From positions 3,162,480-3,226,479 of the forward strand of contig OZ316898.1 in the NCBI GenBank assembly GCA_973895155.1: DNA of 64,000 nucleotides, read 5' to 3'. Below, in pieces: positions 21,243 to 46,687 of the stretch (positions are counted from its first letter, which is position 1; each line of letters opens with the position of its first letter). Source of the stretch: Marsupella aquatica. Its lineage: Eukaryota > Plantae > Marchantiophyta. Both the position numbers and the translations under genes were made by a program. A model generated the notes under the pieces. It searched no databases, was not told the origin of the DNA, and saw only the letters and a program-made list of their open reading frames with translations.

Positions 21243-24200
21243 ATGGGTCTTTTAAATTGGGTTATCGGACTCATAGCGATATGTGCTCCAAAGGCTGGTG
21301 GCCAAAGAGAAGGCAACCGAGCTCTCCATGGCTGTCTTGGTGGGACTGATAGTATTCCGTCGTCGAAGCACACTCCTTGGTTGGAATCGTGGTCAGGGCG
21401 AGTCTTCACGGCTCAAACTGGCTGCTCGGAAGGTAATCTATTCAAATGGTCCTTGATTGCAAATTGTTCAGTCTTTCAATACCTAACTTTTAAACCTAGA
21501 CAAGATAAATCGTGAGATTGAAGAGAAATCATTGCTGCTACGATATCATGTGAACTTGTTTTGGCGTTCTGTTCAAACTAGATCAAATAGAAAGATGACC
21601 AGTGAACGATAATTTCGCTTTTGTGCTTTGGTTGTCTCAGGTGAATGACTCCTTATATGAGCTTTACAAACCTGAGGGTTATCCCGCGATGCAAGTATTA
21701 TTCTTTCACGGGCTTCCATTTGGGGATTGCTCAGAAGCACACCTATCAACCTGGACGAGTGCGGACGGATCTTGCATTTGGCCAAAGGTGTGGTTGACGG
21801 AGGAGTTCCCTCGTGCTCACATCCTGGTTGTCTCTTACGGTGAAGGCCTCAGAGAAGGTTCTGCTGAAAGCTTTGACACGCGCATCATTGTTGAAAACTT
21901 GATCAAAGATCTGATGGAGGCGAACATTGGTCAAGCCCCTCACTGCCCAGTGGTCTTGGTGGGCCACTCTTTTGGGGGTTTGGTCATCAAAGAGATATGC
22001 CTAGAAGTGGAAACTCTAATTTCCCGCCGGATTTCCGACCGGCAAATTTTCAGGGTTAGGAATTTTTTTGATAACTTGAGAGGGTTATTTTATTACAGTA
22101 CTCCTCATCACGGCAGTCCTCAGATAGGAGGAGCACGTAGGGTCTTGAGCGGCCCTTTGTTTAAGTACTTCACAGCATTAAGTACTAAGGCGGGCCAGTT
22201 AAATTACGAATTCAATCGTTTGTGCGACGCTTACCCTAAGTGGCAAATCGACGGATTGGGGGAGCTCCTGCCTGTAGAAACGGTACAGTTGCAGTTACTA
22301 CCTCTTCTATGACATAGTAGCAATGACATAGTCATGGATTTTGCCATTCGTTTGACGGATCTATTGCACGCTGCGCACTGGTTGCTGGATGAGCTTAAAC
22401 TCAGAAGTTTCCGAACGAGCACTACTGTCATGGCTTTGAGTTTATTCAGCTCATTTTGATGAATGCCAAAGAGACCGGTAGTTTACGTACATGTTAGCAT
22501 AGTCTCAAGTATCGAACTGTTATTGAGTACAAGGCTGACAATGTAGCGCCAAAAGGAATGCCTTGGTGTCTTTGTAGTTGCATCAAACTTACTTATTTCT
22601 TGCCGTTGGGCAGGGCCCATTCCGAGATATTGTTATCGTACCAGAAAAATCAGCCAGAGACGGGGATAAGTTTAAACTTGAACGTGCGGACCACTTCTCC
22701 GTGTGTAGACCAGAGGATAAAACCTCAGGAAGGTTCCGCGCTCTCGCAAGATTCCTTCGCGAGATTGTTGAAAATTCGGAGGTTGGCTAACTATGACCTT
22801 ATATTCAGAAGTTACTTCTATTGTCATTCTAAGTAACATGCAAAGTGTCTATATATGTAGTTGACAATCTGTTTCATGTCTCCTTGATTGAAAAATGGAA
22901 AAATCGTCGAAGACGAATTTAGGATTGCTTCTTTAATGAACCAGGTCCCACATTTGAGTACAGTGTTTTGTCCCTGTTTGTGAAGTTGATAAAGGGAATA
23001 TTGTGGAGGTGAAGAGGTTGTGCGGAAACAGGATGTACCAGTAAACCGCAACAGGAAAGAAATCTACCTTAAGAAACTGTGTATTTGCTATACTTACTAT
23101 ATTGGATTGATCTTTGCAGGCAATCGTGCATGGGCTCCCGGCTTTGGAGAGGAGTGTTTTTGAGGTTCAACAGAAGCTTACAGATACTCCAGTTCTAGGA
23201 ATAGTGGGTATGGGTGGAATAGGGAAAACCACCATCGCAAAAAAAGTATTTGAAAATATCTCTCCACAGTTTGAATACACGTGCTTTGTGGAAAACTACA
23301 GTCGAAACCCAATGCTCGCATTCAACGAAGGGATACTCAACCAATTTTTGAGGGCAGGCACTAGGTGTGACCGTAAGTCGGTACAATGGGAAGATCTTGA
23401 GAATACGAGCGTTCTGATAGTTATGGATGATGTTATCTCGCTCCCTGAACTCTTTATCCTGCGATTCAATAACTTTCGATATGATAGTCGAGTGATCATT
23501 ACAACGCGTGATCGGTCCGCCTTGGATTCTTTCCCAGAGTGTCCAATCTACGATGTTAATTTCCTCACCTTTGGCGAGGCGAAAAAGCTCTTTAACCAAA
23601 TGGTATTTGGGGTAGAAGAAATTCCGGACCATTTTCTGGAGATGAATCACTTGCAAGAAATAGGCGAAAAAGTGGTACTGATATGCAATGGCTTACCATT
23701 GACGCTGGAAGTAGTGGGGAGCTATCTTCGACGTCACAAGAGTAATGCCGAGGCCTGGGTGGAGACATTGTACAGGCTTGGGCTTGGGAACGCCCAGTCT
23801 GTTGGTGGACTTGCTAACGACGTAGTGTGGCAGTCATTGCGCCTGAGCTATGATTCTCTCACACTTGACGAGCAAGAAATGTTCATCGAAGCTGGGATTT
23901 ACTTTTTTGAGCAGCCGGTAGAAAGAGCCCTTGCAGCTTGGAGCACTGTTGATGGAAAAGCAGAATCGATTTGGGTCGGCTTGCTGAGGTCATCCATGGT
24001 GAAGGAAGTCTATAAGAGTGAATGGAATGATTCCTGGTTGAAGCACCGAAACTATAAGACTGTATGGATGCACGAGCAGATGCGTGATATGGCCAAGGCG
24101 CTGTCGAAAGGGGCAATGATATCAAGGTCTGTTGGAGACAGTTACAAATCAGTGGATCCTTTCAATGCAAATACGGTAAATACTGAACCAAAAACTGCGC

Positions 24201-27200
24201 GTCGGTAGTCTTGTATTGAGCAATTGAATGCAATCGCTGCCAGTACTTATCAATTTTCATGGAAGCGTTGATTCCCCATTTTGTTTTTCTTACGGGTTCT
24301 TATTTTAAGTTAGTCTTGTTAGGAACGTTTCAATTGGGATATGACAGCAATTTTATCGATGATTTATGTTCAGGAATCCAATCGCACGACAAATTATGTT
24401 GTCTTCTCCTCTGTTGTCGTCTGCATATGTAGCAAAAACCTTATTGCTTAAAGAAGGCTTATTCAGGATGTACATTGTCATTAGGTGGAAGGACAGACAA
24501 GAATTCTGCGGCTCGCCTACAATTCTGTCAGTTTTCCTGCGAATTACCCAAAGCTTCAGTTAGAACTGCTGGATAAGTTGGTGAACCTGAAGTATTTGGA
24601 ACTGGTTAATGTTGTGCCTGAGGGGACGAGCAAGAATTTACCAAGGAAGCTTTCCTTACTTAAGTGGAATTTGAAACGGGAAGGGGATATGTGGACTCAG
24701 ACCCCCCCAACCCTGCTTACTATTAGCCTGGCAGACATGCATTATTTGGCGGTCTTGGAACTCGAGTATTGGGAGATGCCGGACGAGATTCTTGAAGCAT
24801 TGGGGAAGCTCAGCAACCTGCGCATTTTATCACTTTCTCATATACGAGGGCCTGCCCGTCTCCCGGAAAATTTTGGTCATCTGTCACGGTTGAGGCGTTT
24901 TGAGTTGAAGAATGTGAGGTTAACGACGTTGCCGCATTCGTTTGGCAACCTCTCGGCCCTGGAATATTTCTCCTTACACGATACAGATGTTGCGGAGCTG
25001 CCTGAGTCTTTCGGGAATCTCTCCTCCCTGTCAACATTAGTTATTCGTGAGTGTCACACTCTTGCAAGTCTGCCCGCGAGTTTCGGGAATCTCTCCTCCC
25101 TGTCAACATTAGTTATTCGTGAGTGTCACACTCTTGCAAGTCTGCCCGCGAGTTTTGGGCTTCTTTCAACCTTAGAAGAACTTGAGTTGAATGAGTGTAC
25201 GTTCCTCAAGACGCTGCCGGAAAATTTTGGCCAACTGGAGGCTTTAGAGAGATTGATCATAGAAGGGGCTAAACATCTGAAAGCCCTACCTGATAGCTTT
25301 GGTAGATTATGTGCCCTCTCATATTTGCGTCTGAACAGCTGTCAGAGGCTTGAAAGATTGCCAGCGAGGTTCGGTGATCTCTCGGCCTTGCAAGAATTAG
25401 AGGTAATAGATTGTTGCCGATTGCGGAGATTGCCGGACAATTTCGACCTACTCGTCGGCCTTCAGAAGTTGATTATAAAGCGGGCCTATCAGCTAGAGAT
25501 GCTACCTGATGACTTTGGGAACTTAGCTTCTCTTACATATCTAAGTCTAAGAGGTTGTCGAAGTCTTGGAAGACTGCCTGAGAGTTTCTGTCTTCTATCT
25601 ACCCTGCAAGAACTGGCGTTGGAAGGGTTGGAGGAATTAAAGAGACTGCCGGGCAATTTCGGCCAACTCGGGCTCTTCAGAAATTGACCATATCGTCGGC
25701 CGTCAACCTGGAGGCTCTGCCTGAGAGTTTCTGTTTCTTGTTTGCTCTGCAGGAACTCCATCTGAAGCGTTGTGGACAATTGCAGAAGTTGCCAGATAAT
25801 TTCGGCGACCTCTCAAAGCTTAACAGGTTAAGCATAGATAGTGCTGAGCATCTTGAGACGCTATCCAATGGCTTTGGGAACTTAGCTTCTCTTACATATC
25901 TAAGTCTAAGAGGTTGTCGATGTCTTGGAAGACTGCCTGAGAGTTTCGGTCTTCTCTCAGCCCTGCAAGAACTGGAGTTGGAAGGGTTGGAGGAATTAAG
26001 GAGATTGCCGGGCAATTTCGGCTACCTCTCAGCTCTTCAGAAACTAACCATATCAGCGGCCGATAACCTGGAGGCTCTGCCTGAGAGTTTCTGTCTTTTG
26101 TCTGCGCTGCAAGAACTCCATCTGAAGCGTTGTGGACAATTGCAGAAATTGCCAGAAAATTTCAGCCACCTCTTAAACCTGAAGAGGTTAAGCATGGATA
26201 GTGCTGAGCATCTTGAGACGCTACCTGATGACTTTGGGAACTTATCTTCTCTTACATATCTAAGTCTAAGAGGTTGTCGATGTCTTGGAAGACTGCCTGA
26301 GAGTTTCGGTCTTCTCTCAGCCCTGCAAGAACTGGAGTTGGAAGGGTTGGAGGAATTAAGGAGATTGCCGGGCAATTTCGGCTACCTCTCAGCTCTTCAG
26401 AAACTAACCATATCAGCGGCCGATAACCTGGAGGCTCTGCCTGAGAGTTTCTGTCTTTTGTCTGCGCTGCAGGAACTCCATCTGAAGCGTTGTGGACAAT
26501 TGCAGAAATTGCCAGAAAATTTCAGCCACCTCTTAAACCTGAAGAGGTTAAGCATGGATAGTGCTGAGCATCTTGAGACGCTACCTGATGACTTTGGGAA
26601 CTTATCTTCTCTTACATATCTAAGTCTAAGAGGTTGTCGATGTCTTGGAAGACTGCCTGAGAGTTTCGGTCTTCTCTCAGCCCTGCAAGAACTGGAGTTG
26701 GAAGGGTTGGAGGAATTAAGGAGATTGCCGGGCAATTTCGGCTACCTCTCAGCTCTTCAGAAACTGACCATATCAGCGGCCGATAACCTGGAGGCTCTGC
26801 CTGAGAGTTTCTGTTTTTTGTTTGCTCTGCAGGAACTCCATCTGAAGCGTTGTGGACAATTGCAGAAGTTGCCAGATAATTTCGGCGACCTCTCAAAGCT
26901 GAACAGGTTAAGCATAGATAGTGCTGAGCATCTTGAGACGCTATCCGATGGCTTTGGGAACTTAGCTTCTCTTACATATCTCAGTCTAAGAGGTTGTCGA
27001 TGTCTTGGAAGACTGCCTGAGAGTTTCGGTCTCCTCTCTACCCTACAAGAACTGGAGTTGGAAGGGTTGGAGAAATTAAAGAGATTGCCGGGCAATTTCG
27101 GCCAACTCCTGGCCCTTGAGAAACTGACCATATCGTCAGCCGACAACCTTGAGGCTCTGCCTGAGCGTTTCTGTCTTTTGTCTGCTTTGCAAGAACTCCA

Positions 27201-28620
27201 TCTGAAGCGTTGTGGACAATTGCAGAAATTGCCAGATAGTTTCAGCGACCTCTCAACGCTGAACGAGTTAAGCATAGATAGTGCTGAGCATCTTGAGACG
27301 CTATCCGATGGCTTTGGGAACTTAGCTTCTCTTACATATCTCAGTCTAAGAGGTTGTCGATGTCTTGAAAAACTGCCTCCGAGTTTTGGGCTACTTTCAA
27401 CGTTAGAAGAACTTGAGTTGAATAAGTGTACGCACCTCAAGACCCTGCCGGAAAATTTTGGCCAACTTTCGGCTTTGAAGAGATCGATCATAGAAGGGGC
27501 TGAACACCTGGAAGCCCTACCTGATGGCTTTGTTAAATTAGGTGCCCTCTCATATTTGCGTCTCAACACCTGTGAGAGTCTTGAAGGATTGCCAGAGAGG
27601 TTCGGTGATCTGTCGGCCTTGCAAGAATTAGAGGTAATAGATTGTTGCCGATTGCGGAGATTGCCGGACAATTTCGACCTACTCGTCGGCCTTCAGAAGT
27701 TGATTATAAAGCGGGCCTATCAGCTAGAGATGCTACCTGATGACTTTGGGAAATTAGCTTCCCTGACATATCTGAGACTACAAGGGTGTCGACGGCTTGA
27801 AAGACTGCCTGAGAGTTTCTGTCTTCTATCTACCCTGCAAGACCTGGAGTTGGAAGGGTTTGAAGAACTACAGAAATTGCCGGGGAATTTCGGGCAACTC
27901 CTGGCCCTTCAGAAATTGACCATATCATCGGCCGACAACCTAGAGGCGCTCCCTGAGAGTTTGTGTCTCTGCTCTGCCCTGCAAGAACTCCATGTGAAGT
28001 GGTGTGGAAAATTACAAAGATTGCCAGAAAATTTCGGCCAACTCTCAGCTCTCAAGACGTTAAGCATAAAAGGGGCCGACCAGCTTGAGGCGCTACCGAA
28101 CAGTTTTGGGGACCTCTCTTCACTGGAAGATTTGTTCATTGGGGCGAGAATGTTGCAAAGGTTCCCGGTAAGTATAGGGAACCTTCATGCCCTGAGAAAG
28201 CTGACTGTTTTGGCCCAAAGGCTGAGGAGTTTACCGGAAGAGGTTGGTAATCTCTCTTCTCTAGAAATCCTGAAGATTGAACGATGTCGAAGCATAGAGA
28301 CTCTTCCGAACAACTTATCGGACATTTCCTCCCTGACAAAAGTTATACTTCAATACTGCAGCAGATTGAAAAGTATACCAGGTAGTTTGGGAAAGTGCAT
28401 CTCTCCTCATGGGCACTGCAGTACTGGGACGAGTAGACCAGTAGGGGGCGGCCAGTCCTCCCAAATAGCATCCACGGAGGGGTTCCAGCTACATGTAGAG
28501 GAGTGCCCACTCCTTGATAACTCGGTGCTGCAAGGATTGGGTTGGATTCAATCTGATAGAAAGGGTTATGATTGTGACAGTAATGGCAATCTACTACTGT
28601 GGTATAGAGAAATGTTGTAA
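21243..28620 (+). CDS. Alpha/beta-hydrolase-NB-ARC-LRR NLR ('NLR-A'); exons ~21243(or 21328)-21432, 21641-22282, 22614-22781, 23120-24175, 24485-28620; apparent frameshifts at ~21290 and ~25670 (possible pseudogene or assembly error)
   Basis: Hydrolase: VLFFHGL, IWPKVWL, GHSFGG, STPHHG, IVPEKSA, DHFSVCRP. NB-ARC: GMGGIGKTT, IVMDDV, IITTRD, CNGLPL, LSYDSL, MHEQ. More than 50 24-aa LRRs of type LPESFGxLxxLxxLxLxxCxxL. The LRR ORFs 24485..25687 and 25684..28620 are in different frames. Confidence 0.9.
25502..27370 (+). repeat. Coding tandem array of a 360-bp (5 x 24-aa LRR) unit, 5 full copies plus a partial
   Basis: Unit starts CTAYCYRATGRCTTTGGGAACTTA at 25502, 25861, 26221, 26581, 26941 and 27301. 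25921-26280 and 26281-26640 are essentially identical. Confidence 0.95.
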
Positions 28621-28807: not shown

Positions 28808-29152
28808 TCAACTTTCAGAAATGCATCCAACAGCTCTCAAAGAATCATCAGTATCTAGGTCACTCTGGCAATACCGGTATATAATATTCCTGAAACATTC
28901 CATCCACACGGTGAACACTACATGACGAGTATAATTTCTTGCCGTGACAACCTTGCGTAGGCCTTCCGGCAAAGAAGGGAATCCTGCTGTCTTGACCCAA
29001 CTTAGTCCAAGAATTTTCAGCGACCTTAGTTTCACAAAATTGGGGATGCGCTGCAACGATGTCTCTTTCAGCTCCACGCGTTGTACTCCTTGCAATTGCA
29101 GAAATGTCTCTGGCAAAGAGTGCAGACAACCACACTCCAGAATTTTCACTTC
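28808..29152 (-). pseudogene. In-frame LRR tail of NLR-B cut off by a premature TAG
   Basis: The frame continues ...DLRTL*EVKILECGCLHSLPETF...LKETSLQRIPNF..LSW..T..FPSLPEGLRKVVTARNYT, homologous to the ends of the two upstream LRR modules. Confidence 0.8.
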
Positions 29153-32100
29153 CTATAGGGTCCGTAGGTCCCCAATTGATTCTGGCAAGGCTGCTAGAGA
29201 ATGGCAAAAGCCGATTTTCAAAGTTTCCAAAGCAACCAACGCTCCCAGACCGTCAGGTAGCCTCCGCAAAGCAGGACACTCTTCAATAATGAGATGTTTC
29301 AGCTTTGCTAGCCCACCAATTGAATCAGGTAAGCTCTTCAAATGATTCCACCCCTTGATTTCGAGCTGCTGCAGGTTCTGTAGGCGCCCAATCGATTCTG
29401 GCAGGGCTAATAGGGAATCGCAAAAGCCAATCCCCAAAGTTTCTAAAGTCACGAACCCTCCAAGATTCTTGGGTAGCAGCTTCAAAATAGGACACCACTT
29501 AATAATGACATGCTTCAGCTTTGGTAGCGAACTAAGTGAATCAGGCAAGCTTTCCAAACAATCACACCCATTAATTTGAACCAGCTCCAGGTTCCGTAAG
29601 CGCCCGGTTGACTCTGGCAAGGCGTCTAGAGAATGGCAAAAGTAAATCCTCAAAGTTTCCAAATCGCTCAACTGTCCAAGGCTTGCAGGTAGCGACCTTA
29701 AAGCAGGACACCGTTCAATACTGAGATATTTTAGCATTCGTAGCTTTCCAAGTGAAGTCTGCAAGCTCTTCAAACCATCACACCCATCAATTTGGAGCTG
29801 CTTCAGGTTCCGTAAGCGCCCAGTTGATTCTGGCAAGGCTTCTAGACAACTACAAAAGCCAATCCTCAAAGTTTCTAGAGCCACCAACTGTCCAAGGCTT
29901 TCTGGTAGCGAGCTCAAATAAGGGCACCGTTCAATACTGAGATGTTTCAGCACCGGCAGGTTTCCGAGTGAATGAGGCAAGCTCTCCAAATCACATCCCC
30001 TAATTTGGAGCGTCTGAAGCAGCAGTAAAGACCCAATCGACTCTGGCAAGGCTAACATGGAATAACAAAAGCCAATCCTCAAACTTTCTAAAGGCACCAA
30101 GTGTCCAAGACTGTCAGGTAGCCTCCTCAAAGCAGGACACCACTCAATGCTGAGATGTTTTAGCATTGGCAGGCTTCCGACTGAACTATGCAGGCTCTTC
30201 AGATAATCAGACCCCTTAACTTGGAGCTGCTGCAGGTTCTTTAGGTGCCCTACTGATTCTGGCAAGGCTCCTAGAGAACGGCAATAGTGAATCCTCAACG
30301 TTTCAAGAGCCACCAACTGTCCAAGGCTTTCGGGAAGCAACCTCAAAAAAGGGCACCGTTCAATACTGAGATGTTTCAGTACTGATAACTTTCCGAGTGA
30401 ATGAGGCAAGCTCTCCAAACCACACCCCATAATTTTGAGCGTCTTAAGCATCCCTAGGGATCCAATCGATTCTGGCAAGCCCAACAAAGAATCACAAAAG
30501 TTAATTTTCAAACTTTCTAATCCCACCAAGTGTCCAAGGCTATCAGGTAGCCTCCTCAAAGTAGGACACCGTTCTATACTGAGATGTTTTCGCATTGCTA
30601 GATGCGACAGTGAATCAGGCAAGCTCCCCAGAGTATTAATACCCTCAAGTATCCCAATAATATCCATGGATATATGTTGAAAACTCCCCGGACGATCTGC
30701 TCGAAGTATTCCATTTACAACGCTGAAGGTTAATGGAGACGTATAATTCTTTGTCGTAACCAGCTCCCGGAGGCATGTAGGCAAAACCGGGAATTCCGAT
30801 GTCTGGCTCCAACTTAGTTGAAGAGTTTTCAGCGACTCTAGTGTCGTTAAGTCTGGAACACGCAGCAAAGATGTCTCATTCAACTCAATGTGTTCGAGTG
30901 CTTGCAGTCCCAGGAATTCCCCTGGCAGTTTCTGGAGACGACTACACCTCGTAAGTCTGATATCCGTGAGCTTTGATAGGTACTCGAGGGATTCTGGCAA
31001 GTTTGAAAGAGAATCGCAAAAGCAAATCCTTAAAGTTTCCAAAGCCATCAAATGCCCAAGGCTTTCTGGTAGCGACCTCAACCTAGGACACCGTTCAATA
31101 CTGATATGTTTTAGCATTGATAGCCTTCCGAGTGAATCAGGCAAGCTCTCCAAATGACACCCCACAATTTCGACCGCCTGCAGCTTCCGAAGAGATTGAA
31201 TCGATTCTGGTAAGGCCACCAGCGAATCGCAAAAGCCAATCCTCAAACTTTCTAATGCCATCAACTGCCCAACGCTGACTGGTAGCGACCTCAACTTAGG
31301 ACATCGTTCAATACTGAGATGTTTTAGCTTTGCTAGATTCCCAAATGAATCAGGTAAGCTCTTCAAAAATTGATTGCCCTTAATCCTTAAAATCTGAAGA
31401 GACCTTAGTTGGCTGAAACTCTCAGGTAAATTACGAAATCCAGCAATATTACTTAGACTCAGAATGGCCAGACAACTGTGGCGGCTTGGGTTCAAAGGAA
31501 GACAAGAGAAGCTCATCCTGGACAAATGGAGGCAGACAATTGTGGAAGGTAACGTCGAGTCATGTATTTCGTCAATGTCGAATCCTTCTAACGACAAATA
31601 TTGCAACTTGTTCATTTTGCACAATGAGCTTCCCGAAATGGTGACTTGGTTCGCAGGTGCCGATGCCATGGCCTGCAGAACCTGATCCAGAGCACCACTG
31701 AATGGGTTAGTCTCTGAGTTCGCTGAAGTACTTCGTCTACTTCTAAAACCAGAAATATGAAATCAAAGTTGATTGCAGGGTGCTGAAGTATGTGCCTTGC
31801 GGTACATTTTAAAAATTGTTGTTGTCAAATTATCTCAATATCCCATTATGGGAAAAACAATATCGTCTAAACTAGAACTGTCATCTATTTTCCCACTCAT
31901 GCGTGTTCTAGGGACTGGAAAATAAAACTATCATTTCATGACGAGAAAACAGAAACTCAACAAGCGCCACAGGGCACATCCCACGAACGAGCTAATAGTT
32001 CTACGGATCATATCGAAGAGTACAAAATCCTATTGAAGAGGACGAAGAAATAGTCCAATCCTCTCAACAAAGGCAATCTAGGGACAGATAACATAAACGG

Positions 32101-35100
32101 ATGGATCTGTTTTTGACAATGAAGGCAGAGCCCAGCATTTTTTGCTAGAAAGTACCAAATTGAGTTTGCATTGAAAAAAGTACTTATTAGCGAATCGTCA
32201 TAATAGTGCATGAGTGGAAAAAGGATACAAGAATTGAGATCACCAATCTTATGTTTTTCACAGCAATTACGGAAAAATTTCTGGGTCTGAATAGGGCTAT
32301 TCTATGCAGTGCGGAAGACTGGATTGGTTTGCTATCATAGGGAATCCATTCTCGTTGCCTTATCTCCAATTGTATAAGCCAAGAAAGCTTGGAGGGTAAT
32401 TTAGTCCTATTCTGTTAGATAAGTTTCGGAGGTTGTTTCTCAACAGAGGTCTTACCGAGATCTTATCAAACAACATTTACAATTAAACTGATTGTGGCCT
32501 CGACATCTCATACAGTTTATTTCTATGAATCTGAAAGATGAAAGCGTTAGCAAGTTCTAACAAAAGTAACGTCGGAATGTGTAGAACGAGTCTTAGAACT
32601 TCTTATATATACCATTATTTCCGGCATATGAAGGTGGGTGCCCCAGATGTAGAACGGAGACTCGTCCAGACACCAAGATATTCTTATCCATTTCATATGT
32701 CTAGACGCTTAATGTTCAAAGTGTTGGCTTTGTCGGCATGAGGTGCTTTATGGTCTACAAATCATATCAGGTAAGAATGTTCTTACTCGTGCCCGGCCAA
32801 TGTTCTGTGAATCGAGGTTCTTCTCCGGGTCCCGCTCCGGGTCTTCGTTGGATTCCTCCTGTATATCCTCATCGAATTCCTCAAACTCCTCCTCCACATC
32901 CTTCTGCAAACCGAAACCCTGCATATTATGCATCCAGATCTTCTGCATATCCAAATCCCGCCTGCAACACTTCAGACCAATGACGTCCTGCAATATGCCA
33001 ATCCCGGGCCGATTTATGCTATTTAGTTTTTGGCTCAAAGTGCAATCTTCGTTTACGTTTGGAAAGCATTAGAACTTGTGGAAGAGCAAACAAAATGTAA
33101 GCCATAATAGTTGTAACGCATAGAAAATTATGTAGCTGGGCCTGAACCCGCTGTTGCCAAATCACCTTCATATCATCCCCATTGTGGTTGTTTGCTGACA
33201 ATAGTTCGAATGCTGTCGCACTATCGTTCCAGATCCTGAGGCCATTTTCTCCACGAGTAAAAGCTATCGTCCTGCCGAGACTCTGAAGCTGAGCCTGCAT
33301 GCTAATCTGTATCTTATCTTTATCGATGCGTTCCTCCCACACCAAAGAAAGATCTACAAGACGTTGCCATTTAATGTCTTGCTGTCCCTTCGTGACGATG
33401 CTCCATGCTGACTTTGCAGTGCTTAAGTCCGACTTGAAGAATGAGGTAGCACAATCTAGAAACATATTCTGCTCCACCTTGTCAAGGTCATTGTAACTGT
33501 CCCTCAATCTAGCCCACAGTCTCTCATCAAAATCACTTAACGGCAGTTGGTTGTCCAACGCCCACACAACTTGCTGCTTCGTGTCTTTGGGGACGACATG
33601 ATGCTTTGTGGATTCTGCCTGAAGATATTTGCCTACAACTTCTAAAGTCAAGGGTAATCCGTCACATTTACCTACAATATCATCTACATCATGAGTCAAA
33701 CGAGGACCTACCAAGGCGGACAAGAGTTGTTTTGAGAACTCTTGGCTAAGCAATGGGACATGAATAACGTTGCCCGACAACCTTTGGCAAAGTGAGAAGT
33801 CCCTAGATGTTACTACGAACAGACTTTCTTTGTGAAGAACTTTCGCTCGGAAGATGGGTAATATCTGACGGTCTATCTGTTCCTCTTCTTCCACATCGAC
33901 ACCATCCAGCATCAGCAACAGCCGTTGCCCGTTCAAAAACTCCATATCTTGCTTCCTTTCCTTCTCACTAATTTTTTTGCCCCATCGATGCATGTGCTCA
34001 GATACTGCCCTAATAGTTTTAACACCCGTTATGAAACAGGTGTATTCATAATCACGCGCCAGTTCATTGAATAATGCCACGGCCAGGGTAGTCTTTCCTA
34101 TCGCAGCCATGCCAACGAGACCCAAACTATTTTTGGACTTAAGATTGGATTCAAGTTCCACTAAAACCTGATCAATCCCGACAAGCTCTGTCGGTATTTC
34201 TTGAAAATTGTTTGCACGATCTGTTTGAAGTACACCATCCACAACACTGAAGGTTAATGGAGCAGTATAATTCCTGTCCGTAACCTGTTCCCGAAGGCAT
34301 TCAGGCAACGATGGGAATTTTGATGTCTGGCCCCAACTCAGTCGAAGAGTTTTCAGCGACTTCAGATTCTTGAAATTGGGCACGTGCAGCAACGATGTCT
34401 CGTTCAGCTCAATGTGTTCGATTGCTCTCAGTGTCAGGATTTTCTCCGGCAGCTTCTCAAGACGACTACACCTCGTAATTCTGATATCCTTGAGCTTTTG
34501 AAGGCCCCCAAAGGAATTGGGTAACATTGATAAAGATTCACAGGAGTCGATCCTCAAAGTTTCCAAAGCCTGCAGCTGTCCAAGGCTATCGGATATCATC
34601 TTCAATATAGGACAACCTTCCACTATCAGATGTCTAAGCTTTTGAAGGCTCTTGAGTGAATCATCCAAGCTCTCCAAATCACTATTACCCTCTATAGTTA
34701 ACATCTGAAGAGATATTAGATCGCCAAAAGGTGCAGGAACGGTGCGCAATCCAGAAATGTTGCTTAGACTCAAAATGGTTAGACGACTGTGGCAGCTTCG
34801 GTTGAAAGGGAAGTTCACACTGGACAAATGGAGGTAGACAATTGTGGATGGTAATGTCGAGTCGTGAGTTTGTTCAATGTCAAAGCCGTCCAACCATAAA
34901 TATTGCAACTTCGTCATTTTGCACAGTTGGCTCCCCGAGATTTTGCCATAATTCTGACGTGACAACTCCGTACCCTGCGCAACCCAGTCCATATTACCAC
35001 ACAACGGCGTCAGGAAGACAAGGCTTTCAAAACCAAGATTGCTTGCTATGGCCGGGCTGGAACGCGGTGCTTGCTCGAACAGCCGGACAATGAGGAGCTT

Positions 35101-38100
35101 GAAAAGTCGAAACGTGGGCCTTTACACTCCCCCAAACCTCACCAAGATCTACCACTTCAATGTCCGTGGGGCTAATCAAATTTTAGAATGTGACTTCTAA
35201 AGAAGAAATGGATTTTTCCCTCTTTCAAGTTACTTTCGTTACGGTTACTAACTGTGGACCATACGTTTGGAAGATCCCAGGATTTCGCTTGCTTACTCGC
35301 AAAGAAACTCACTCCTCACTCACTCCTCTTAATCGTATAGTCCGTTTGGGTTCTTGTTTTTCCGTTTAATTCAGATTGAAGGTCGTAAGTCAATCCTGCC
35401 GTCGTCGCAATTATATTATTTGCATTCCAATATGCCTTCAAACTCCATATCCTCTAAATCACTTGTATATCGTTGATGTTCAAATTGAACGTTTGACTGT
35501 TCTCTGGAGTTTGCATAAGGTGGTTCTGGGTCTACACAGCAATCCAATTCACTTAGGAAGGTACTTACTGAGATGCTGCCGGTAATCTCCGGATCTAACT
35601 CCCTCGTGCAAGACTTCAAAGCAACGATGTCCTGCAAAAGCCAAACCCGAGGGTACTTACGGTAGTCATCCTTTGAGTGAAAGACCCATACTCGTGTTGT
35701 TTGGATTGCAATTGAACGGCATGAAGTGGGAAAGTCCGGTAAGGCATATTAGCTTTTAACTGATTGGGAATGGCCCGATTATACTCTGGCTAATTTACCT
35801 TCACATGATCTGGATCCACGGTATCTGCTGACAATAGCTTGAACGCCTTCATACTATCGTTCCAGATCCTGCGTCCACTTCTCTCAGAAGTAGAACCTAT
35901 ACTCCTGCCGAGATCCAACAGCTGCTCATGCATGCCAATTGCAATCTTTTCTCCATCACGGACTTCCCACACCAAAGACAAGTCTACCAGGCGTCGCCAA
36001 TGCAAGTCTTCGAATCCATCCGTGATGATATTCCAAGCTGCCTTTGCAGTAGTTAAATCAGATTTGTAGAATACGTCAGTAGCATCGAGGAACATTTCCT
36101 TCTCGGGCTTTGGCAAAGCGTCGTAGCTGAGCCTCAGTTTAGCCCATAGTTGCTCTTCCAATCCACCCACATCCTTTGTCTTTTCCAGTGCCGGAACAAT
36201 TAGCTTCCAAATTGATAAGTCGCACTCCTTGGATTTGGTATTAAGATACTTGCCTACGACTTGTAAAGTCAATGGCAAGCCGCCACACTTTTCCACGATG
36301 TCATCTACATAACTTTGAAATGGATCGGAAGCTCCACTCTGGGCACATATGAGGAAAAACTTTTTCGAGCTTTCAGGAGAAAGATATGGAACAGTATGCA
36401 CTTCAAAACCATTTGATGCTAACAGTTCTTTGCTTCTGGATGTTGCAACAAATCGATATCTATCTTTGGGAATCTCAAATTCGTCTGTCAAGAACCGCAC
36501 AATATCAAAGTCTCGTTCTGAGCTCACATCATCCACTACAAGTAGCAGCGTCTTTCCTTTCATCTTCACCTTCAACCTTCCTATATTCTGTATAATTTTC
36601 TGCCCTCGATGATACATATTTTTCAGTATGATATCTTCGACCTGCTGAGGTCGACCCATGATATCTTTCATATCTTTCACGCAATTAAGGAAACAGGTGT
36701 AGTCATAGACAGGCTCCAAGTCGTTGAACAAGGCCATGGCCAGGGTGGTCTTTCCTATCCCTCCCATGCCATCAAAGCCCAACCTGGTAGTCTTATTGAG
36801 CTTGCCTTTGACTTCTTTCAAAACCCCTTCAATTCCAGTTATTGACCGCGGTAACCTTTGAAGGTTCCCAGTGTGTTTATCCTGCAGTTCCAACAGTCAA
36901 GCCCATCAACGTCAGTTACAAGATTTCAAATGCAAATATAAACTGCCTAAAAGGTCTCAGTCACAGAAAAGGTTGCGTTGCACTAGCGAACCAAGCCAAT
37001 AAACATTGGTTCGATGTCTTCAGATCGAGGTAGGAATTGGCATGCATCCGAAATGCCTAAGTCTCAAAATCAAAAAATTCATTAGTGTACTAGCGAACCA
37101 TAAGAACTTTAGAAAACTGAGTGTAAAGGATCGGGAGAACCCACATTTGAATCCATAGCAACCTCCTTCAGAAGTTGTGTCAAGGCAGTGAACCTTCTAT
37201 TGACTTTGCTCGGTGGCCTGGAAATTGAAATATGATCTGCTGCTTCCGCCATGTTGAAATTCATACCATCTCTTGCAGATGCTTCGGGTACAACTAGACC
37301 ACGGAACTTACCCTGCACAACGATGACGAAAGGTTTACATAATCATACGATGGATCGCGTTAAACGAGTCCTCGAGTAACTAATCATTGGCTTGCCTAGA
37401 GTATGAAGACTACACAGACTTTCTGAATTGGGTGATGGGATAGGATAATCAAAGAACACAAATGCCCAAATTGGTCACAACAACTCGACATCCCGCCAGC
37501 ATAAGATCCAATAGTTTCTCTCCTAGGGCCATGACCGTTCTCACGCTATCAGGAATACTGCAAAATATTCAGGGATGAAGCATAGCGATGAGCATGTTCC
37601 TTGCCCACTGCGACAATGAAACGAACCTTAAGCTCATTACCTACTCTTGCAGTGATTCTATTCGGCGTTCGGGGACCAAGAGACTCATCAAGGGCTCCAA
37701 ATTCACAAAGAACACAGACATCAAATTCAGAAGGTGAGGGCTGCGAACTGGTCGGCTCTGCACAGTTGTTTCATGATTGAGATGGGACGAACTCCGAGGG
37801 TCTCTACAAGCATATAAAAATATTCCTACACAGACGAACCTTTTCTAGCTAAAACAGGTTAGTCCAAGGAACTGCGAAGCAGATTTTAAGAGACAATTCT
37901 TCCTGGTTGGGCTCTGACTAGATGCAAATCATGTAAGCTAAAACCGACAACAGTAATGCCAAATGAAGACTTCCATTGAACAGTGAGCTACAAGACATCT
38001 CGAAGGGTTACTCAAACTCTCGGGTGGTCACGTCAATGATTCTTTTTCATCACGTTAATTTGGTGGACATCTACATACGTACCCATTTGCTTGCACGAGT

Positions 38101-39080
38101 TTCTCCGAGTCCTGCAATCTTCCATGTCGCATGTCGCTTGCAGAGCCCAGTAAAATCAAAATTCAGTCTTGCCGTGTCTTTGCTTAAGGTTTTCACATAA
38201 GTTAGTAAAGGGCTCTCGGGCCTGAACGACCTTGGGGGGTTCATAAAAGAAATCTTGGTATCGGAAATACCATGATGAGGTGTTGCATAAAAAAACATCC
38301 CCATCAAGTTATCTAAAAAGATTTCGAGTCCCGGCTTTGACTGGACATTCTGGCTGAATGCGTACACGCATAGCCTCTTTAGCACCAAACCCCCAAAACT
38401 GTGACCAACCAGTACGACTGGGCAACGGGGCTCTTGTCCTATCGTTGGTAATAAATCTGAGAGTAAGTTCTCTACGAATAGGTACATGTCAATTTGTCCA
38501 CTTTGTTCAGGGTCTATCATCATGCCTAGCCCTCCATTATAAGATATAGTCAGAATGTGCGGATCAGGAAATTCCTTCACGAGCCAGGTTTGTGGCCAAA
38601 TACACAACTCGTCTCCAGATAACCATGTGAAGAGGTGTGCATTTTCATAACTCCCACGTTGAAAACCGTGAAAAAACACAACTTGCATACTTGTTACAGT
38701 GTCTTTTGGGCGATACAACTCATACAATGAGTCATTCAGTTTCACCACCTGAAGAACACGGACAACAGGAGACGATCAGTACTGTATAGGAAATAGTTGT
38801 TTCTTGGCCTAGTACCGGCTGTTGGACACAGCAAATAGTCATTATATGGAATCAAAGTGAAGGGAGCAATTGACATTGTAGTTGGACGAATGCCGGCAAT
38901 ACCAGGCCTCATGATGTGGCGTACCTTATCAACCTGCTCCTTGATTTTGGAAGCACTTCCGACCAATTCCCTTGGCCGGTTCCATCCGAGCCTCTGCAGA
39001 AACCGGGTTGATTTTTCTGTGGCATAGAGGGCCGCGCATATTCCAACAGCGACCTTGGTCAGCCACTCCAGGAAACCCAT
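29153..39080 (-). CDS. Tandem-NB-ARC hydrolase NLR ('NLR-B'): N-terminal helix - alpha/beta-hydrolase - NB-ARC1 - LRR - NB-ARC2 - acidic linker - LRR, ~2,220 aa; exons 39080-38925, 38748-38083, 37312-37145, 36881-35799, 35631-35569, 34974-33166, 32987-32787, 31672-29153
   Basis: All seven introns are GT..AG and phase 0. Hydrolase: FFHGF, IWPQTWL, GHSFGG, ATPHHG, VVPEASA, DHISISRP. NB-ARC1: GMGGIGKTT, VVDDV, CGGLPL, MHEQ. NB-ARC2: GMAAIGKTT, MLDGV, CDGLPL, MQAQ. Both LRR blocks begin ISGS.LCKM.KLQYL.L.GFDI...HDSTLPSTIV. Confidence 0.88.
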
Positions 39081-43950: not shown

Positions 43951-45331
43951 TAGTGTATTTCTCATTCAAGTAAGATTGCAATAATTGTGCGTAGAAGGCA
44001 CTGAATGGCTCAGCCTCCCAAGCATGACCCAGGTACAATGGCAGGCACTAAGTCTTCCCTTTTTTTTCTTTTTTTCTTTTTCCCCTTTGTAGTCTGAGGG
44101 AGGGTCGAGCCTAGCTACTGTAGAGGGATTTGTCTTGCAAACAATAGCTAGCCTGGCTGAATTTGAAATGTTCAAATCTTGTGTAAAACAAAGTGTCAGG
44201 TTAGTACCCTTACTAACCTGTGGCCTGTTTAGTGGGTCATGAGTGTAAGGATTATAACCCATAATCCCCTCTAGGCCATGAGTTACCCTACACTTAATCC
44301 ACATACTCAATAGGTTTTGACCCTTTGGGTGGATTGTTTCTTAGATGCAATTTTTTGCCAGATCCAATCTCCCTTTGGAAATTTTTTGTTACATTATTTG
44401 TATCCCATTATAGCCAGTGGATAGTCTAAACTCGACTAGCCATTGGCCAGGATCTGTACTGACCCGTGTCGTCCTATACTGAAACCGGGGCCTGGGGGGC
44501 CAGAACTGCACGGTGGGCAGTTTGACCGGAATTTTTATTTTGCCACACTTCTCCACATTTTCCCAGCTCCAGCCATCTTCAATTGATGGACCACATCAGA
44601 TAATTTAACGAGGGTAGGGGACTACTGTAGGGGCTGGAGAGAAAACCAACGGACCCTGAAGTCAACAACAGCCTCGTTTTTCTGACTTCTGACAAAGAGT
44701 AAAGTAGAGATGCCTGGAGGACCCAGGTACATGCAGCTCTCGATCAGAATCGAGCACTGTTGTGGATCGCTCTGGACCGACGATTGAAACCCGTTTGACC
44801 GATGGCAAGCTTCTGGGCAATGTACACTGATGATGCAAACAGGACCTGCGCCCGAGTGGATCGAATTGTATGCGTCTCTGAGCAGCACACTGATAGACAT
44901 GGGGGAAAACTTGATCTCAAGTTGATGTTTTTCGATGAAACAATACCCGAGTACTTATCATATCATTTTGTTGGACCGTGCTTCAAAGTTGATCTTTCTG
45001 GTGAGGCATGGCATGCGAACTTTCTAGTTGTTGATAATGAAAACAGTGCCTTTTCTGTCGAGGTAAGTGTTCTCGGCCCTAGGTTTGGTCTGGAGGGTTA
45101 ATTAAGGTGGAGGAGTTTCCACAGGACCCGAAAAACAGCCGTGATCTGCTGCGGATGTGATCCATTCGCTGTTTCCATATGGGCGTGCTCGGAAAGATGG
45201 AATGTTTGGTGGAGAGTGGATACAACCTGCACGAGCCGGCCAACGATTAGAGAGTTGGCTGACTGGGCTAGAAGAGCTGGGAGATTCTGTGAAAGGTTGT
45301 GTTAATTGTTTTGTGCAAGCGAAAGTCGATT

Positions 45332-46687
45332 ATGGCGGATCCCAGTTCATCAGTGGATCGTGGTCCGACGTGCAGTTCTCCCGAGGCACAAAGAGCTACA
45401 GTTTGGTTGCAGAGTTTGAAACGTATTCAGTGGAATCCGGACTTTGTCGACGCTCGGATCAATGACCTTAGATCTCACTTTCGTTACTCCTGTGAACGGA
45501 GAAGTTCTGGCACCCAAACGAATGCCTTCAATCAATTGCGGACCACCTGGGATTTGAGTTTGGGAGATGCGGACCGCCAGTGTATCGTGGCCGCAATGAT
45601 AGAGCTATTCGAACCCGTTGTAGACCAGAAGACTGGAAAAAGAACTGGTGAGATGGCCGTGATGCATCTAGCAGCCTTTCTGGGACTACATGATTTGATG
45701 GAAATGCTTGCCAGGAGGCCCGAATTTTTGCAAACGATCAATGCCACGGATTCTGACGGAAAGACTCCTTTGCATCTGGCGGCACTGACGGGAAGTCTGG
45801 AGGCCGTAAAGTTTTTGGACGGCCAGGAAATGTTGAGAGCAGATTTGGAGGACGGCTCAGAGCAAACTGCGTATGAGATAGCGGACGAGATCGGATGGCA
45901 CGAAATCGTGAAAGTCTTCTTGAATCGAGCGGATGTGAACAATTATCTCAACAAGCGGCGCGCTGATAGGAGTATGTATGGTGACGGGACAAACGCCATA
46001 CTTGTAGGTGCTGCCCTGATTGCCAGCATCACTTTTGCAGGATGGCTTCAACCGCCATTGGGCTACCAAAAATACTACCAATACCCTAGAAATGCAACAA
46101 TGCCGGGTGCTCCTGTAGATGATTTCCAGCAATATGCGGCAATCCTCGAGCATTTAAGTGTGAAGATATTCTGGGTCACGAACAGTCTGTCATTCTACTT
46201 CGCCATCGCTGCAATCTTGACTGGAGCAGGTGCTATGGTTCCTCGCCGTGGGTTGGGGGAATTAGCGGAAGTGAAGAGGAAACGTGGCGCTGCGTACTTG
46301 ACCGGCTTTGTGTTCTCTTGGGCAGTCGTTTTTGTAGTCGTAGCTTTTACAGCAGCTGGGTTTGCTTCCCTACCTCCCGGCCTTACCTATGGAACTTACA
46401 TGATAACCACATTGGTGGTGGGGTGTCTCGTTTGTATTCTAAGCTTCAGTAGTGTCCGCATGTCAGATCCGAGCTTATTTCTGAGTTACACGGAATGCAT
46501 AGACCCTGCTTGGTACTTTTCTAAGTTGTCCAATCTCTTCGAGCGGTGTTGCCGACCGTTTGGCTACAATTCATTCGAGTCAAGGACCCGTCAAAGGAAA
46601 AAAACTTACAATCCTGGTCAAGTTAAAGGATCCAGCCAAGGAGGGTCCGTTCCGGGCCTCGTCCCCAAGTTTTGCAGGTGTGTCTAA
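45332..46687 (+). CDS. Ankyrin-repeat, PGG-domain transmembrane protein (ACD6/ITN1-like), intronless
   Basis: About 3 ankyrin repeats (VMHLAAFLG, DSDGKTPLHLAALTG, DGSEQTAYEIA). PGG-domain signature ILVGAALIASITFAGWLQPPLG, then FWVTNSLSF and further hydrophobic helices. ATG at 45332. Confidence 0.88.
   Translation: MADPSSSVDRGPTCSSPEAQRATVWLQSLKRIQWNPDFVDARINDLRSHFRYSCERRSSGTQTNAFNQLRTTWDLSLGDADRQCIVAAMIELFEPVVDQKTGKRTGEMAVMHLAAFLGLHDLMEMLARRPEFLQTINATDSDGKTPLHLAALTGSLEAVKFLDGQEMLRADLEDGSEQTAYEIADEIGWHEIVKVFLNRADVNNYLNKRRADRSMYGDGTNAILVGAALIASITFAGWLQPPLGYQKYYQYPRNATMPGAPVDDFQQYAAILEHLSVKIFWVTNSLSFYFAIAAILTGAGAMVPRRGLGELAEVKRKRGAAYLTGFVFSWAVVFVVVAFTAAGFASLPPGLTYGTYMITTLVVGCLVCILSFSSVRMSDPSLFLSYTECIDPAWYFSKLSNLFERCCRPFGYNSFESRTRQRKKTYNPGQVKGSSQGGSVPGLVPKFCRCV

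What the first reader, a model, noticed from the sequence alone, without database searches (positions are those of the whole stretch)
29153..39080. Hydrolase-NLR with two NB-ARC domains in one protein (Hyd-NB-ARC-LRR-NB-ARC-LRR)
Seen: eight exons join in frame through phase-0 GT/AG introns into ~2,220 aa. ORF 33019..35004 fuses an LRR block directly to a second complete NB-ARC with no intron or stop between them, so NB-ARC2 is not the start of a separate ordinary NLR. The repeated module (NB-ARC, short D[IV][VI].LK.C.R.LD exon, ISGS.LCKM.KLQYL LRR block) indicates intragenic duplication. Known: hydrolase-NB-ARC-LRR proteins occur in liverworts, and typical NLRs have one NB-ARC. Inference: this may be a covalently fused sensor/executor or double-ring resistosome that switches on a lipase-like effector. 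I do not know this architecture to be characterised.
Basis: partly seen in the sequence, partly recalled or inferred. Interest (0 to 1): 0.9.

Follow-up and report, generated by a model that had tools for sequence, protein, structure and literature searches.

The report
Liverwort hydrolase-NLR with two NB-ARC modules
A liverwort immune-receptor gene really does encode a lipase-like domain followed by two successive NB-ARC–LRR modules in one reading frame; relatives in Calypogeia fissa share this layout, but no RNA data could be checked and this copy ends at an early stop codon.

Summary
On the minus strand, eight exons (39080 to 29156) are each a whole number of codons. They join through seven GT..AG introns and sum to 2,221 codons.

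- **Fused exon.** Exon 6 (34974-33166, 603 codons, no stop) runs from an LRR block through the family's normal C-terminal tail straight into a second NB-ARC.
- **Conservation.** Three annotated Calypogeia fissa genes, about 57% identical, have the same exon structure, including one 615-624-codon LRR1+NB-ARC2 exon.
- **Phylogeny.** NB-ARC1 and NB-ARC2 form separate, fully supported clades, so the layout predates the split between the window gene and the C. fissa genes.
- **Selection.** NB-ARC2 is under purifying selection (dN/dS about 0.46, like NB-ARC1). It also carries clade-specific changes: Walker B DD to DG and MHD-type MHE to MQA.
- **Assembly.** A roughly 2% diverged second organism has contigs across the junction. 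All nine listed frame-breaking indels lie outside the exons.

Caveats:
- No RNA run was available, so a single transcript is inferred, not shown.
- This copy has an in-frame TAG at 29155-29153 that removes the last 114 codons.
- NLRs with two NB-ARC domains are already known (WTN1, Sr62-NLR, RPP2A; NLN/NLNLN survey classes).

Verdict: a new variant of a known kind. The resistosome mechanism is untested. The scan had not noted this architecture on other DNA.

The parts
38925..39080 (-). Exon 1 (52 codons): ATG, then a hydrophobic N-terminal stretch; donor GTACGC
   Evidence: The N-terminus resembles that of the neighbouring NLR at 21243. No counterpart was found in the C. fissa loci, so this exon is the least certain.
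38083..38748 (-). Exon 2 (222 codons): core of the alpha/beta-hydrolase domain with the GHSFGG nucleophile elbow
   Evidence: Pfam Abhydrolase_6 at 23.6 bits, below the 26.3 cut-off. It is 53-57% identical to the DUF676-positive N-termini of P0001 and P0002. The elbow aligns to solved hydrolases.
37145..37312 (-). Exon 3 (56 codons): end of the hydrolase domain (VVPEASA ... ADHISISRP)
   Evidence: The donor GTGGGT is identical to that of the C. fissa genes.
35799..36881 (-). Exon 4 (361 codons): NB-ARC1 with canonical motifs (GMGGIGKTT, VVDDV, GGLPL, MHE)
   Evidence: Pfam NB-ARC 8.8e-21; motifs. The acceptor position equals P0001's annotated exon boundary.
35569..35631 (-). Exon 5 (21 codons): short linker exon DIVALKSCTRELD...; donor GTAAGT
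   Evidence: It is homologous to the 19-22-codon exon of P0001, P0151 and P0152.
34231..34974 (-). Exon 6, first part: LRR1 ending in the family's C-terminal tail (ELNETSLL ... NYTAPLTFSVVDG)
   Evidence: Pfam LRR_14 and LRR_8. The tail equals the C-terminus of single-NB-ARC relatives.
33166..34230 (-). Exon 6, second part: NB-ARC2, continuous with LRR1. The P-loop is GMAAIGKTT, Walker B is LDGV, GLPL is intact, and the MHD position reads MQA.
   Evidence: Pfam NB-ARC 1.8e-17. Best solved match is the Roq1 NB-ARC, 1.4e-20. Motifs; dN/dS 0.45-0.48.
32787..32987 (-). Exon 7 (67 codons): second short linker exon DVIGLKCCRRDLD... with an acidic insertion; donor GTAAGA
   Evidence: Its end ...RAR|GTAAG matches the C. 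fissa exon ends ...AR|GTAAGT.
29156..31672 (-). Exon 8 (839 codons): LRR2, an internal scar, then a third LRR block
   Evidence: Pfam LRR_14 4.6e-77; internal repeats.
30629..30745 (-). Scar inside exon 8: a C-terminal tail plus the first ~20 residues of an NB-ARC exon, followed directly by LRR. This is the remnant of a third NB-ARC unit.
   Evidence: It is 74.8% identical at the DNA level to the exon 6 junction region (34682-34195 against 31158-30671).
29153..29155 (-). In-frame TAG stop, at a position where the paralogous LRR unit has a Lys codon
   Evidence: comparison of units.
28811..29152 (-). 114 further open codons in the same frame, carrying the last LRRs and the normal C-terminal tail. 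This is the ancestral 3' end of the gene.
   Evidence: P(114 codons open by chance) is about 0.001. Tail motif compared.

Best explanation
**What it is.** This is a genuine single-ORF hydrolase-NLR of a leafy-liverwort (Calypogeia-type) clade. Its layout is alpha/beta-hydrolase, NB-ARC1, LRR1, NB-ARC2, LRR2, followed in this copy by the scar of a third unit and a further LRR block.

**Shown**
- The layout arose once, before the window gene and the C. fissa P0001/P0151/P0152 genes diverged.
- It arose by joining the full C-terminal tail of one NB-LRR unit to the first residues of the next NB-ARC exon.
- Selection has kept it open and constrained.

**Inferred mechanism**
- NB-ARC1 has every canonical motif and sits next to the hydrolase. 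It is taken to be the nucleotide switch that oligomerises and brings the lipase-like executor domains together.
- NB-ARC2 keeps its P-loop and GLPL motif but has lost the second Walker B acidic residue and the MHD histidine. It is taken to be a nucleotide-binding but non-cycling module that acts as a regulatory or sensor platform together with a second LRR surface.

**This copy.** It carries a recent nonsense codon that removes the last 114 codons.
For: - **One frame through the junction.** Exon 6 has 603 open codons with LRR then NB-ARC. P(open by chance) is 7e-16.
- **Same exon structure in C. fissa.** Three annotated genes each have a single LRR1+NB-ARC2 exon of 615-624 codons and matching donor sites.
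- **Conserved junction sequence**.
- **Separate clades.** NB1 and NB2 each have 100% SH-aLRT support and each contain the window and C. fissa members.
- **Purifying selection.** dN/dS between the window and C. fissa is NB2 0.45-0.48, NB1 0.46-0.47 and LRR1 0.40-0.44, with Fisher p from 1e-6 to 8e-8.
- **Clade-specific motifs.** DG and MQA occur only in the four NB2-clade sequences out of 56 NB-ARCs compared.
- **Decay without constraint.** The P0003 locus has an NB2 remnant with 6 stops.
- **Second organism.** Its contigs cross the junction, the 9 listed frame-breaking indels all lie outside exons, and the only exon indel is 3 bp.
- **Tail origin.** Single-NB relatives end in the same tail that precedes NB-ARC2.
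- **Executor role.** Hyd domains of Marchantia Hyd-NLRs trigger cell death in N. benthamiana (PMC11218826).
Against: - No RNA evidence. No RNA run holds the stretch, and all four runs laid were DNA-like contigs without splice joints.
- The C. fissa gene models are predictions. Their RNA support was not checked.
- The in-frame TAG at 29155-29153 truncates this copy.
- Between the two close organisms, the listed exon 6 changes are 19 non-synonymous to 5 synonymous. That is about the neutral ratio, so this copy may be relaxed or diversifying.
- Exon 1 has no counterpart in C. fissa.
- The structure model of exon 6 was unusable (pLDDT 50).
- The functional roles assigned to NB-ARC1 and NB-ARC2 are inferred from motifs only.
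Confidence: 0.66

Rival explanations
1. The architecture is real and was functional, but the window copy is a young pseudogene. The nonsense codon and relaxed constraint mean it no longer makes a working receptor.
For: - In-frame TAG with 114 still-open codons behind it.
- The listed A-versus-B substitutions in exon 6 are 19 non-synonymous to 5 synonymous, close to the neutral ratio.
- The family shows birth-and-death turnover: P0003 has a decayed NB2 and P0002 a truncated one.
- An internal deletion scar lies in exon 8.
Against: - There are no stops or frameshifts in the other 2,221 codons.
- None of the 9 listed frame-breaking indels between the two organisms falls in the 3,429 exon bases (P = 4e-4 if uniform).
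- A high non-synonymous ratio between close accessions is usual for NLRs.
- Loss of the last 114 residues need not inactivate the protein. The annotated models of P0001 and P0151 also end without the tail.
Confidence: 0.22
2. Two transcription units: a Hyd-NB-ARC1-LRR1 gene ends inside exon 6, and a separate NB-ARC2-LRR2 gene starts there from an internal promoter.
For: - No RNA data were available to exclude it.
- Tandem NLRs are often merged by gene predictors. Several angiosperm two-NB-ARC models in the hit list may be such merges.
Against: - No stop codon lies between the LRR1 tail and NB-ARC2 in any of four genes, despite dS of 0.5-0.7.
- Single-NB relatives stop soon after the same tail.
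- The junction itself has dN/dS of about 0.5.
- NB-ARC2 has no N-terminal domain and no upstream in-frame start outside LRR1.
- There is no intergenic DNA at all between the two parts.
Confidence: 0.1
3. Assembly artefact: two paralogous NLR copies were collapsed or chimerically joined.
For: The region is an NLR cluster rich in repeats.
Against: - A Logan contig of organism A covers the whole 5.9 kb identically.
- Independent contigs of a ~2% diverged organism B cover 34028-35022, across the junction, as well as 32697-33975 and 35341-37090.
- The units are only 66-75% identical, too diverged to collapse.
- The same structure occurs three times in C. fissa.
Confidence: 0.02

Closest known systems
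Bryophyte hydrolase-NLRs (Hyd-NLR / HNL class; e.g. Marchantia polymorpha Hyd-NLRs tested in PMC11218826)
   Same: [quoted passage not shown] The NB-ARCs of the window gene fall inside a liverwort Hyd-NLR clade. The hydrolase domain is the presumed executor.
   Different: Described Hyd-NLRs have one NB-ARC and one LRR block. Here a second NB-ARC-LRR module, and the scar of a third, follows in the same frame. NB-ARC2 also has conserved non-canonical Walker B and MHD motifs.
Calypogeia fissa predicted proteins CAM6128917.1 (P0001), P0151 and P0152 on contig CBCUJL010000062.1
   Same: They share the domain order and exon structure, including the single LRR1+NB-ARC2 exon, the two short linker exons, and DG/MQA in NB-ARC2. 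They lie in a syntenic region: the neighbouring Ank-PGG gene has its homologue on the same contig.
   Different: They are only about 57% identical and come from another genome. They are shorter (1,642-1,788 aa) because they lack the third LRR block. They are unnamed predictions with no published analysis that I could find.
Wheat WTN1 and Sr62-NLR (CC-NLRs with tandem NB-ARC domains working with tandem kinases)
   Same: One polypeptide carries two NB-ARC domains. In Sr62-NLR the second NB-ARC is modelled as a docking surface rather than a plain switch. This is a precedent for division of labour between the two domains.
   Different: There the two NB-ARCs are adjacent (NB-NB-LRR), with a coiled-coil N-terminus and a calcium-channel output. 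Here an LRR block separates them and the N-terminus is a hydrolase.
Arabidopsis RPP2A-type genes and NLN / NLNLN classes in angiosperm NLR surveys
   Same: They have more than one NB-ARC, sometimes in NB-LRR-NB(-LRR) order, in one predicted protein. RefSeq models such as Potentilla TIR-NB-LRR-NB-LRR (P0150) show the same module order.
   Different: They carry TIR or CC N-termini. Most are unvalidated predictions, and conservation across species with matched NB1 and NB2 clades has not been shown for them here.
Genetically paired sensor/helper NLRs (e.g. RRS1/RPS4, RGA5/RGA4; from general knowledge)
   Same: One module has canonical ATPase motifs and the other has degenerate ones, so the gene may work like a sensor/helper pair.
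   Different: Pairs are two genes, usually head to head. Here both modules are one polypeptide, and only the first has an executor domain.

Membership tests
Plant NLR (NB-ARC + LRR STAND ATPase) | NB-ARC domain scoring above Pfam's gathering threshold | tested here: met
   NB-ARC1 scores 74.7 bits and NB-ARC2 63.9 bits against a cut-off of 23.5.
Plant NLR (NB-ARC + LRR STAND ATPase) | P-loop GxxxxGK[ST] | tested here: met
   NB-ARC1 has GMGGIGKTT and NB-ARC2 has GMAAIGKTT.
Plant NLR (NB-ARC + LRR STAND ATPase) | Walker B hhhhDD and an MHD-type histidine | tested here: inconclusive
   NB-ARC1 meets both (VVDDV, MHE). NB-ARC2 fails both (LDGV, MQA), and the changes are conserved in its clade.
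Plant NLR (NB-ARC + LRR STAND ATPase) | C-terminal leucine-rich repeats | tested here: met
   LRR_14 scores 4.6e-77 in exon 8 and 9.1e-13 in exon 6.
Bryophyte Hyd-NLR class | N-terminal alpha/beta-hydrolase domain with a serine nucleophile elbow | tested here: inconclusive
   The window exon scores 23.6 bits for Abhydrolase_6, below the 26.3 cut-off. GHSFGG is present and aligns to the elbow of solved hydrolases. The 53-57% identical P0001 and P0002 pass DUF676 (27.7 and 25.7 bits against 20.3). The Asp and His of the triad were not verified structurally.
Bryophyte Hyd-NLR class | NB-ARC groups with liverwort Hyd-NLR NB-ARCs | tested here: met
   Both NB-ARCs fall in an 18-row clade of C. fissa Hyd-NLRs with 95-100% SH-aLRT support.
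Bryophyte Hyd-NLR class | Hydrolase domain triggers cell death | not testable with these tools
   This has been shown only for two Marchantia domains (PMC11218826).
Tandem-NB-ARC NLRs of WTN1 / Sr62-NLR type | Two adjacent NB-ARC domains before a single LRR, with a coiled-coil N-terminus | tested here: not met
   About 250 residues of LRR1 separate the two NB-ARCs, and the N-terminus is a hydrolase.
Single transcription unit (one gene) | mRNA continuous across all eight exons | not testable with these tools
   No RNA run holds the stretch, and only DNA-like contigs were laid. The support is indirect: ORF continuity, selection and the C. fissa gene models.

The most novel reading that the evidence does not exclude
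A covalently tethered sensor/helper NLR. A canonical NB-ARC1 switch controls a lipase-like executor. A conserved, hydrolysis-dead NB-ARC2-LRR2 module acts as a built-in second sensor or brake. Activation would then assemble a resistosome with two kinds of NB-ARC per protomer. This would be a liverwort solution to what flowering plants do with NLR gene pairs.
Probability: 0.15. Interest if true: 0.8.

Novelty: new variant of a known kind. Interest (0 to 1): 0.58.

Why it matters
Hyd-NLRs are a bryophyte-specific receptor class whose activation mechanism is unknown. A small clade repeats the NB-ARC-LRR module in one polypeptide and keeps it under selection. In that clade, one NB-ARC is canonical and the other has conserved degenerate motifs.

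This offers a natural experiment on how NB-ARC modules divide labour within one chain. It is comparable to sensor/helper pairs and to the wheat tandem-NB-ARC helpers, but evolved independently and carries an enzymatic executor.

It also shows how NLR architecture can grow and shrink by whole modules. Intact double, scarred triple, truncated and decayed forms all occur in the same family.

Tried and rejected
- **RNA evidence.** The look-up of sequencing runs found no RNA holder. Read laying on 31400-37300 (5,901 letters, within the operators' limit) gave only DNA-like contigs and no splice joints.
- **Window-encoded proteins in the databases.** None of 243 fetched proteins exceeds 65% identity to the window. 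An exact look-up of a window ORF found nothing. The source species therefore stays unidentified; it is not the annotated C. fissa assembly.
- **Transcript-derived fragments spanning the junction.** The third homology search, with exon 6, found only three genome-derived proteins.
- **Structure of the exon 6 product.** AlphaFold with a 4-row alignment gave pLDDT 50.4, so no fold search was run.
- **Origin of NB-ARC2.** Intragenic duplication versus fusion of paralogues was not resolved (p-AU 0.42).
- **Joined protein.** All searches were exon by exon, by reference.
- **Alternative donor for exon 7.** A 30-codon version was considered and rejected, because the ...RAR|GTAAG end matches C. fissa.
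- **Intron across the TAG.** An intron that would skip the TAG at 29153 was considered and rejected, because the sequence is colinear with the paralogous LRR unit.
Full report
**1. What is in the sequence**

The region is a minus-strand plant gene.
- Pfam on the long ORFs gives a weak alpha/beta-hydrolase hit (38071-38748, with a GHSFGG elbow) and an NB-ARC (35790-36893, 8.8e-21).
- It also gives a 661-codon ORF (33019-35004) holding LRRs at residues 74-227 followed by an NB-ARC at 279-468 (1.8e-17), and an 838-codon LRR ORF (29153-31669).
- Reading the splice sites gives eight exons: 39080-38925, 38748-38083, 37312-37145, 36881-35799, 35631-35569, 34974-33166, 32987-32787 and 31672-29156.
- Each exon is a multiple of three and every intron is GT..AG. 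The codons sum to 2,221.
- I did not build or search the joined protein. Every search was made exon by exon, by reference.

**2. The fused exon is real and not chance**
- Exon 6 has 603 open codons. At the local base composition the chance of that is about 7e-16.
- The two NB-LRR units are only 66-75% identical in DNA, and the similarity runs through the intron after each NB-ARC. This is an old duplication, not a collapsed repeat.
- Contigs from a second organism, about 2% diverged, cover 34028-35022 (across the junction), 32697-33975 and 35341-37090. A contig of the first organism covers the whole 5.9 kb identically. Misassembly is therefore very unlikely.

**3. What the junction is made of**
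- Single-NB-ARC relatives end with a characteristic tail (…ETFLQLQ…L..T.L..VP…LKTL…W…FP.LP.CL…NY…F.V.DG.F) followed shortly by a stop.
- In exon 6 that complete tail is followed within two or three residues by the sequence that normally opens the NB-ARC exon (…NFQ..P…VGI…).
- So the join is 'end of one NB-LRR unit to first residues of the next NB-ARC exon'.
- The same join, with the NB-ARC deleted after about 20 residues, sits inside exon 8 at 30629-30745. The gene therefore once had three units.

**4. Relatives**
- A full HMMER scan with exon 6 gave as top hit a 1,766-residue protein that aligns colinearly over residues 5-601, that is, straight through the junction.
- It is an unnamed Calypogeia fissa protein, CAM6128917.1, with DUF676/hydrolase, two NB-ARCs and two LRR blocks.
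- Two further C. fissa genes on the same 2.29-Mb contig (P0151, P0152) cover the junction region fully.
- Exact mapping of these proteins onto their loci shows the same exon plan as in the window. The plan has a 19-22-codon linker exon, one LRR1+NB-ARC2 exon of 615-624 codons and a 29-30-codon second linker exon.
- Their donor sites are the same or nearly so.
- None of 243 fetched proteins is encoded by the window (best 65% identity), so the window comes from another, unidentified leafy liverwort.
- Its neighbouring Ank-PGG gene has its closest named homologue on the same C. fissa contig, which suggests synteny.

**5. History**
- In a tree of 56 NB-ARC domains, the window's NB-ARC2 groups with the three C. 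fissa NB-ARC2s (100% SH-aLRT).
- The window's NB-ARC1 groups with their NB-ARC1s plus P0002 and P0003 (100%). Both clades sit inside a Calypogeia-type Hyd-NLR clade.
- The double layout therefore predates the split of these genes.
- Whether NB-ARC2 came from NB-ARC1 (intragenic duplication) or from a neighbouring paralogue is not resolved (one-clade test p-AU 0.42).
- The family also contains decayed forms. The P0003 locus keeps the junction, but its NB-ARC2 remnant has six stops. The P0002 locus keeps only about 150 residues of NB-ARC2.

**6. Selection**
- Between the window and C. fissa, dN/dS is 0.45-0.48 for NB-ARC2, 0.46-0.47 for NB-ARC1, 0.40-0.44 for LRR1, about 0.5 for the 50 codons around the junction, and 0.26-0.30 for the hydrolase exon.
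- The departures from neutrality have Fisher p values from 1e-6 to 8e-8 for the three large segments.
- NB-ARC2 is thus as constrained as NB-ARC1.
- Between the two close organisms, the nine listed 1-2-bp indels all lie outside the 3,429 exon bases, and the one exon indel is 3 bp. P = 4e-4 if indels fell uniformly. Two indels were not listed by the tool.
- The listed substitutions in exon 6 are 19 non-synonymous to 5 synonymous, close to the neutral ratio. None creates a stop.

**7. The two NB-ARCs differ in a conserved way**
- NB-ARC1 has GMGGIGKTT, VVDDV, GGLPL and MHE, like nearly all relatives.
- NB-ARC2 keeps the P-loop consensus (GMAAIGKTT; GMVGIGKTT in C. fissa) and GLPL, but has LDGV at Walker B and MQA at the MHD position.
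- Among the 56 domains, DG and MQA occur only in the four members of the NB2 clade.
- From general knowledge of STAND ATPases, the second Walker B acidic residue supports hydrolysis and the MHD histidine holds ADP in the off state.
- I therefore infer that NB-ARC2 binds nucleotide but does not cycle like a normal switch.

**8. Caveats for this copy**
- The stop at 29155-29153 is in frame with 114 more open codons (to 28811). These codons carry the last LRRs and the normal tail.
- The TAG sits where the paralogous unit has a Lys codon.
- The chance of 114 open codons is about 0.001, so the nonsense change looks recent.
- Together with the near-neutral substitution ratio, this leaves roughly a one-in-five chance that this allele is on its way to being a pseudogene.
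- Exon 1 (a hydrophobic N-terminus shared with the neighbouring NLR at 21243) has no counterpart in the C. fissa loci and is the least certain exon.

**9. One gene or two?**
- No RNA run holds the stretch, and the four runs laid were DNA-like, so transcript continuity is not shown.
- The indirect case for one gene is strong. There is no stop between tail and NB-ARC2 in four genes at dS 0.5-0.7, whereas single-NB relatives stop right after the tail.
- The junction itself is constrained, and NB-ARC2 has no N-terminal domain or separate start.
- There is no intergenic DNA, and the C. fissa annotators made the same call three times.
- I put one coding unit at close to 0.9, and the full best explanation, including the inferred roles, at 0.66.

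**10. Comparison with what is known**
- Hyd-NLRs are an established bryophyte class, and two Marchantia hydrolase domains trigger cell death in N. benthamiana (PMC11218826).
- NLRs with two NB-ARCs are also known. Wheat WTN1 (bioRxiv 10.1101/2024.08.30.610185) and Sr62-NLR (bioRxiv 10.1101/2024.08.30.610287) are functionally studied. In Sr62-NLR, NB-ARC2 is modelled as the kinase docking site.
- Arabidopsis Col-0 has four such genes, including RPP2A (PMC7747988).
- Domain surveys list NLN and NLNLN classes (PMC11899730).
- Predicted NB-LRR-NB-LRR proteins occur in Riccia and in angiosperms.
- I found no description of a Hyd-NLR with repeated NB-ARC-LRR modules, nor of such a layout conserved with matched NB1 and NB2 clades.
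- Hence the finding is a new variant of a known kind. It is of real but moderate interest, and the proposed 'double-ring' or 'fused sensor/executor' mechanism remains a hypothesis.

Noticed in passing
window 21243-28620 (+ strand): A convergent neighbour is a single-NB-ARC hydrolase-NLR (Hyd 21602-22312, NB-ARC 23114-24208, LRR ORFs 24485-25687 and 25684-28620). Its LRR cassettes are very long and near-identical, so regular that the antisense strand carries ORFs of up to 304 codons. Its C-terminus differs from the tail motif of the gene studied. Only about 190 bp separate the two genes' ancestral ends.
   Followed up: partly
window 39080-38925 and 21243-21300: Both NLRs in the window start with MG[FL]L[EN]W followed by a hydrophobic stretch, which may be a membrane anchor. 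The C. fissa gene models have no such exon; they begin with a 5-codon exon instead.
   Followed up: partly
L001, L002, L003 (C. fissa contig CBCUJL010000062.1): Between paralogues P0001 and P0151, dS is 0.05-0.07 in the LRR1+NB-ARC2 exon but 0.35 in the hydrolase and NB-ARC1 exons. This suggests gene conversion or recombination confined to the 3' half.
   Followed up: partly
L004:13889-14863 and L005:14218-14652: There are decayed or truncated versions of the double layout. The P0003 locus has an NB-ARC2 remnant with six stops and a frame break in the hydrolase exon. The P0002 locus keeps only the first ~150 residues of NB-ARC2 and retains DD at Walker B.
   Followed up: partly
L003:10028-10100 (end of P0152): P0152 stops exactly where the window's exon 8 scar continues into NB-ARC-like residues. 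Module number at the 3' end therefore varies between family members.
   Followed up: partly
P0004 (C. fissa CAM6098506.1, 1,447 aa): Another non-canonical Hyd-NLR has hydrolase, a partial NB-ARC (P-loop near residue 304), a full NB-ARC (684-886), a ZZ-type zinc finger (1102-1138) and LRR. The zinc finger may be an integrated domain.
   Followed up: no
window 45299-46684 (+ strand): An ankyrin-PGG gene lies here. Its closest named homologue (56%) is on the same C. fissa contig as the double-NLR cluster, which suggests conserved synteny around the cluster.
   Followed up: partly
window 32787-32987: Exon 7 carries a roughly 37-codon acidic insertion (rich in E and D) relative to the 29-30-codon C. 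fissa exon.
   Followed up: no
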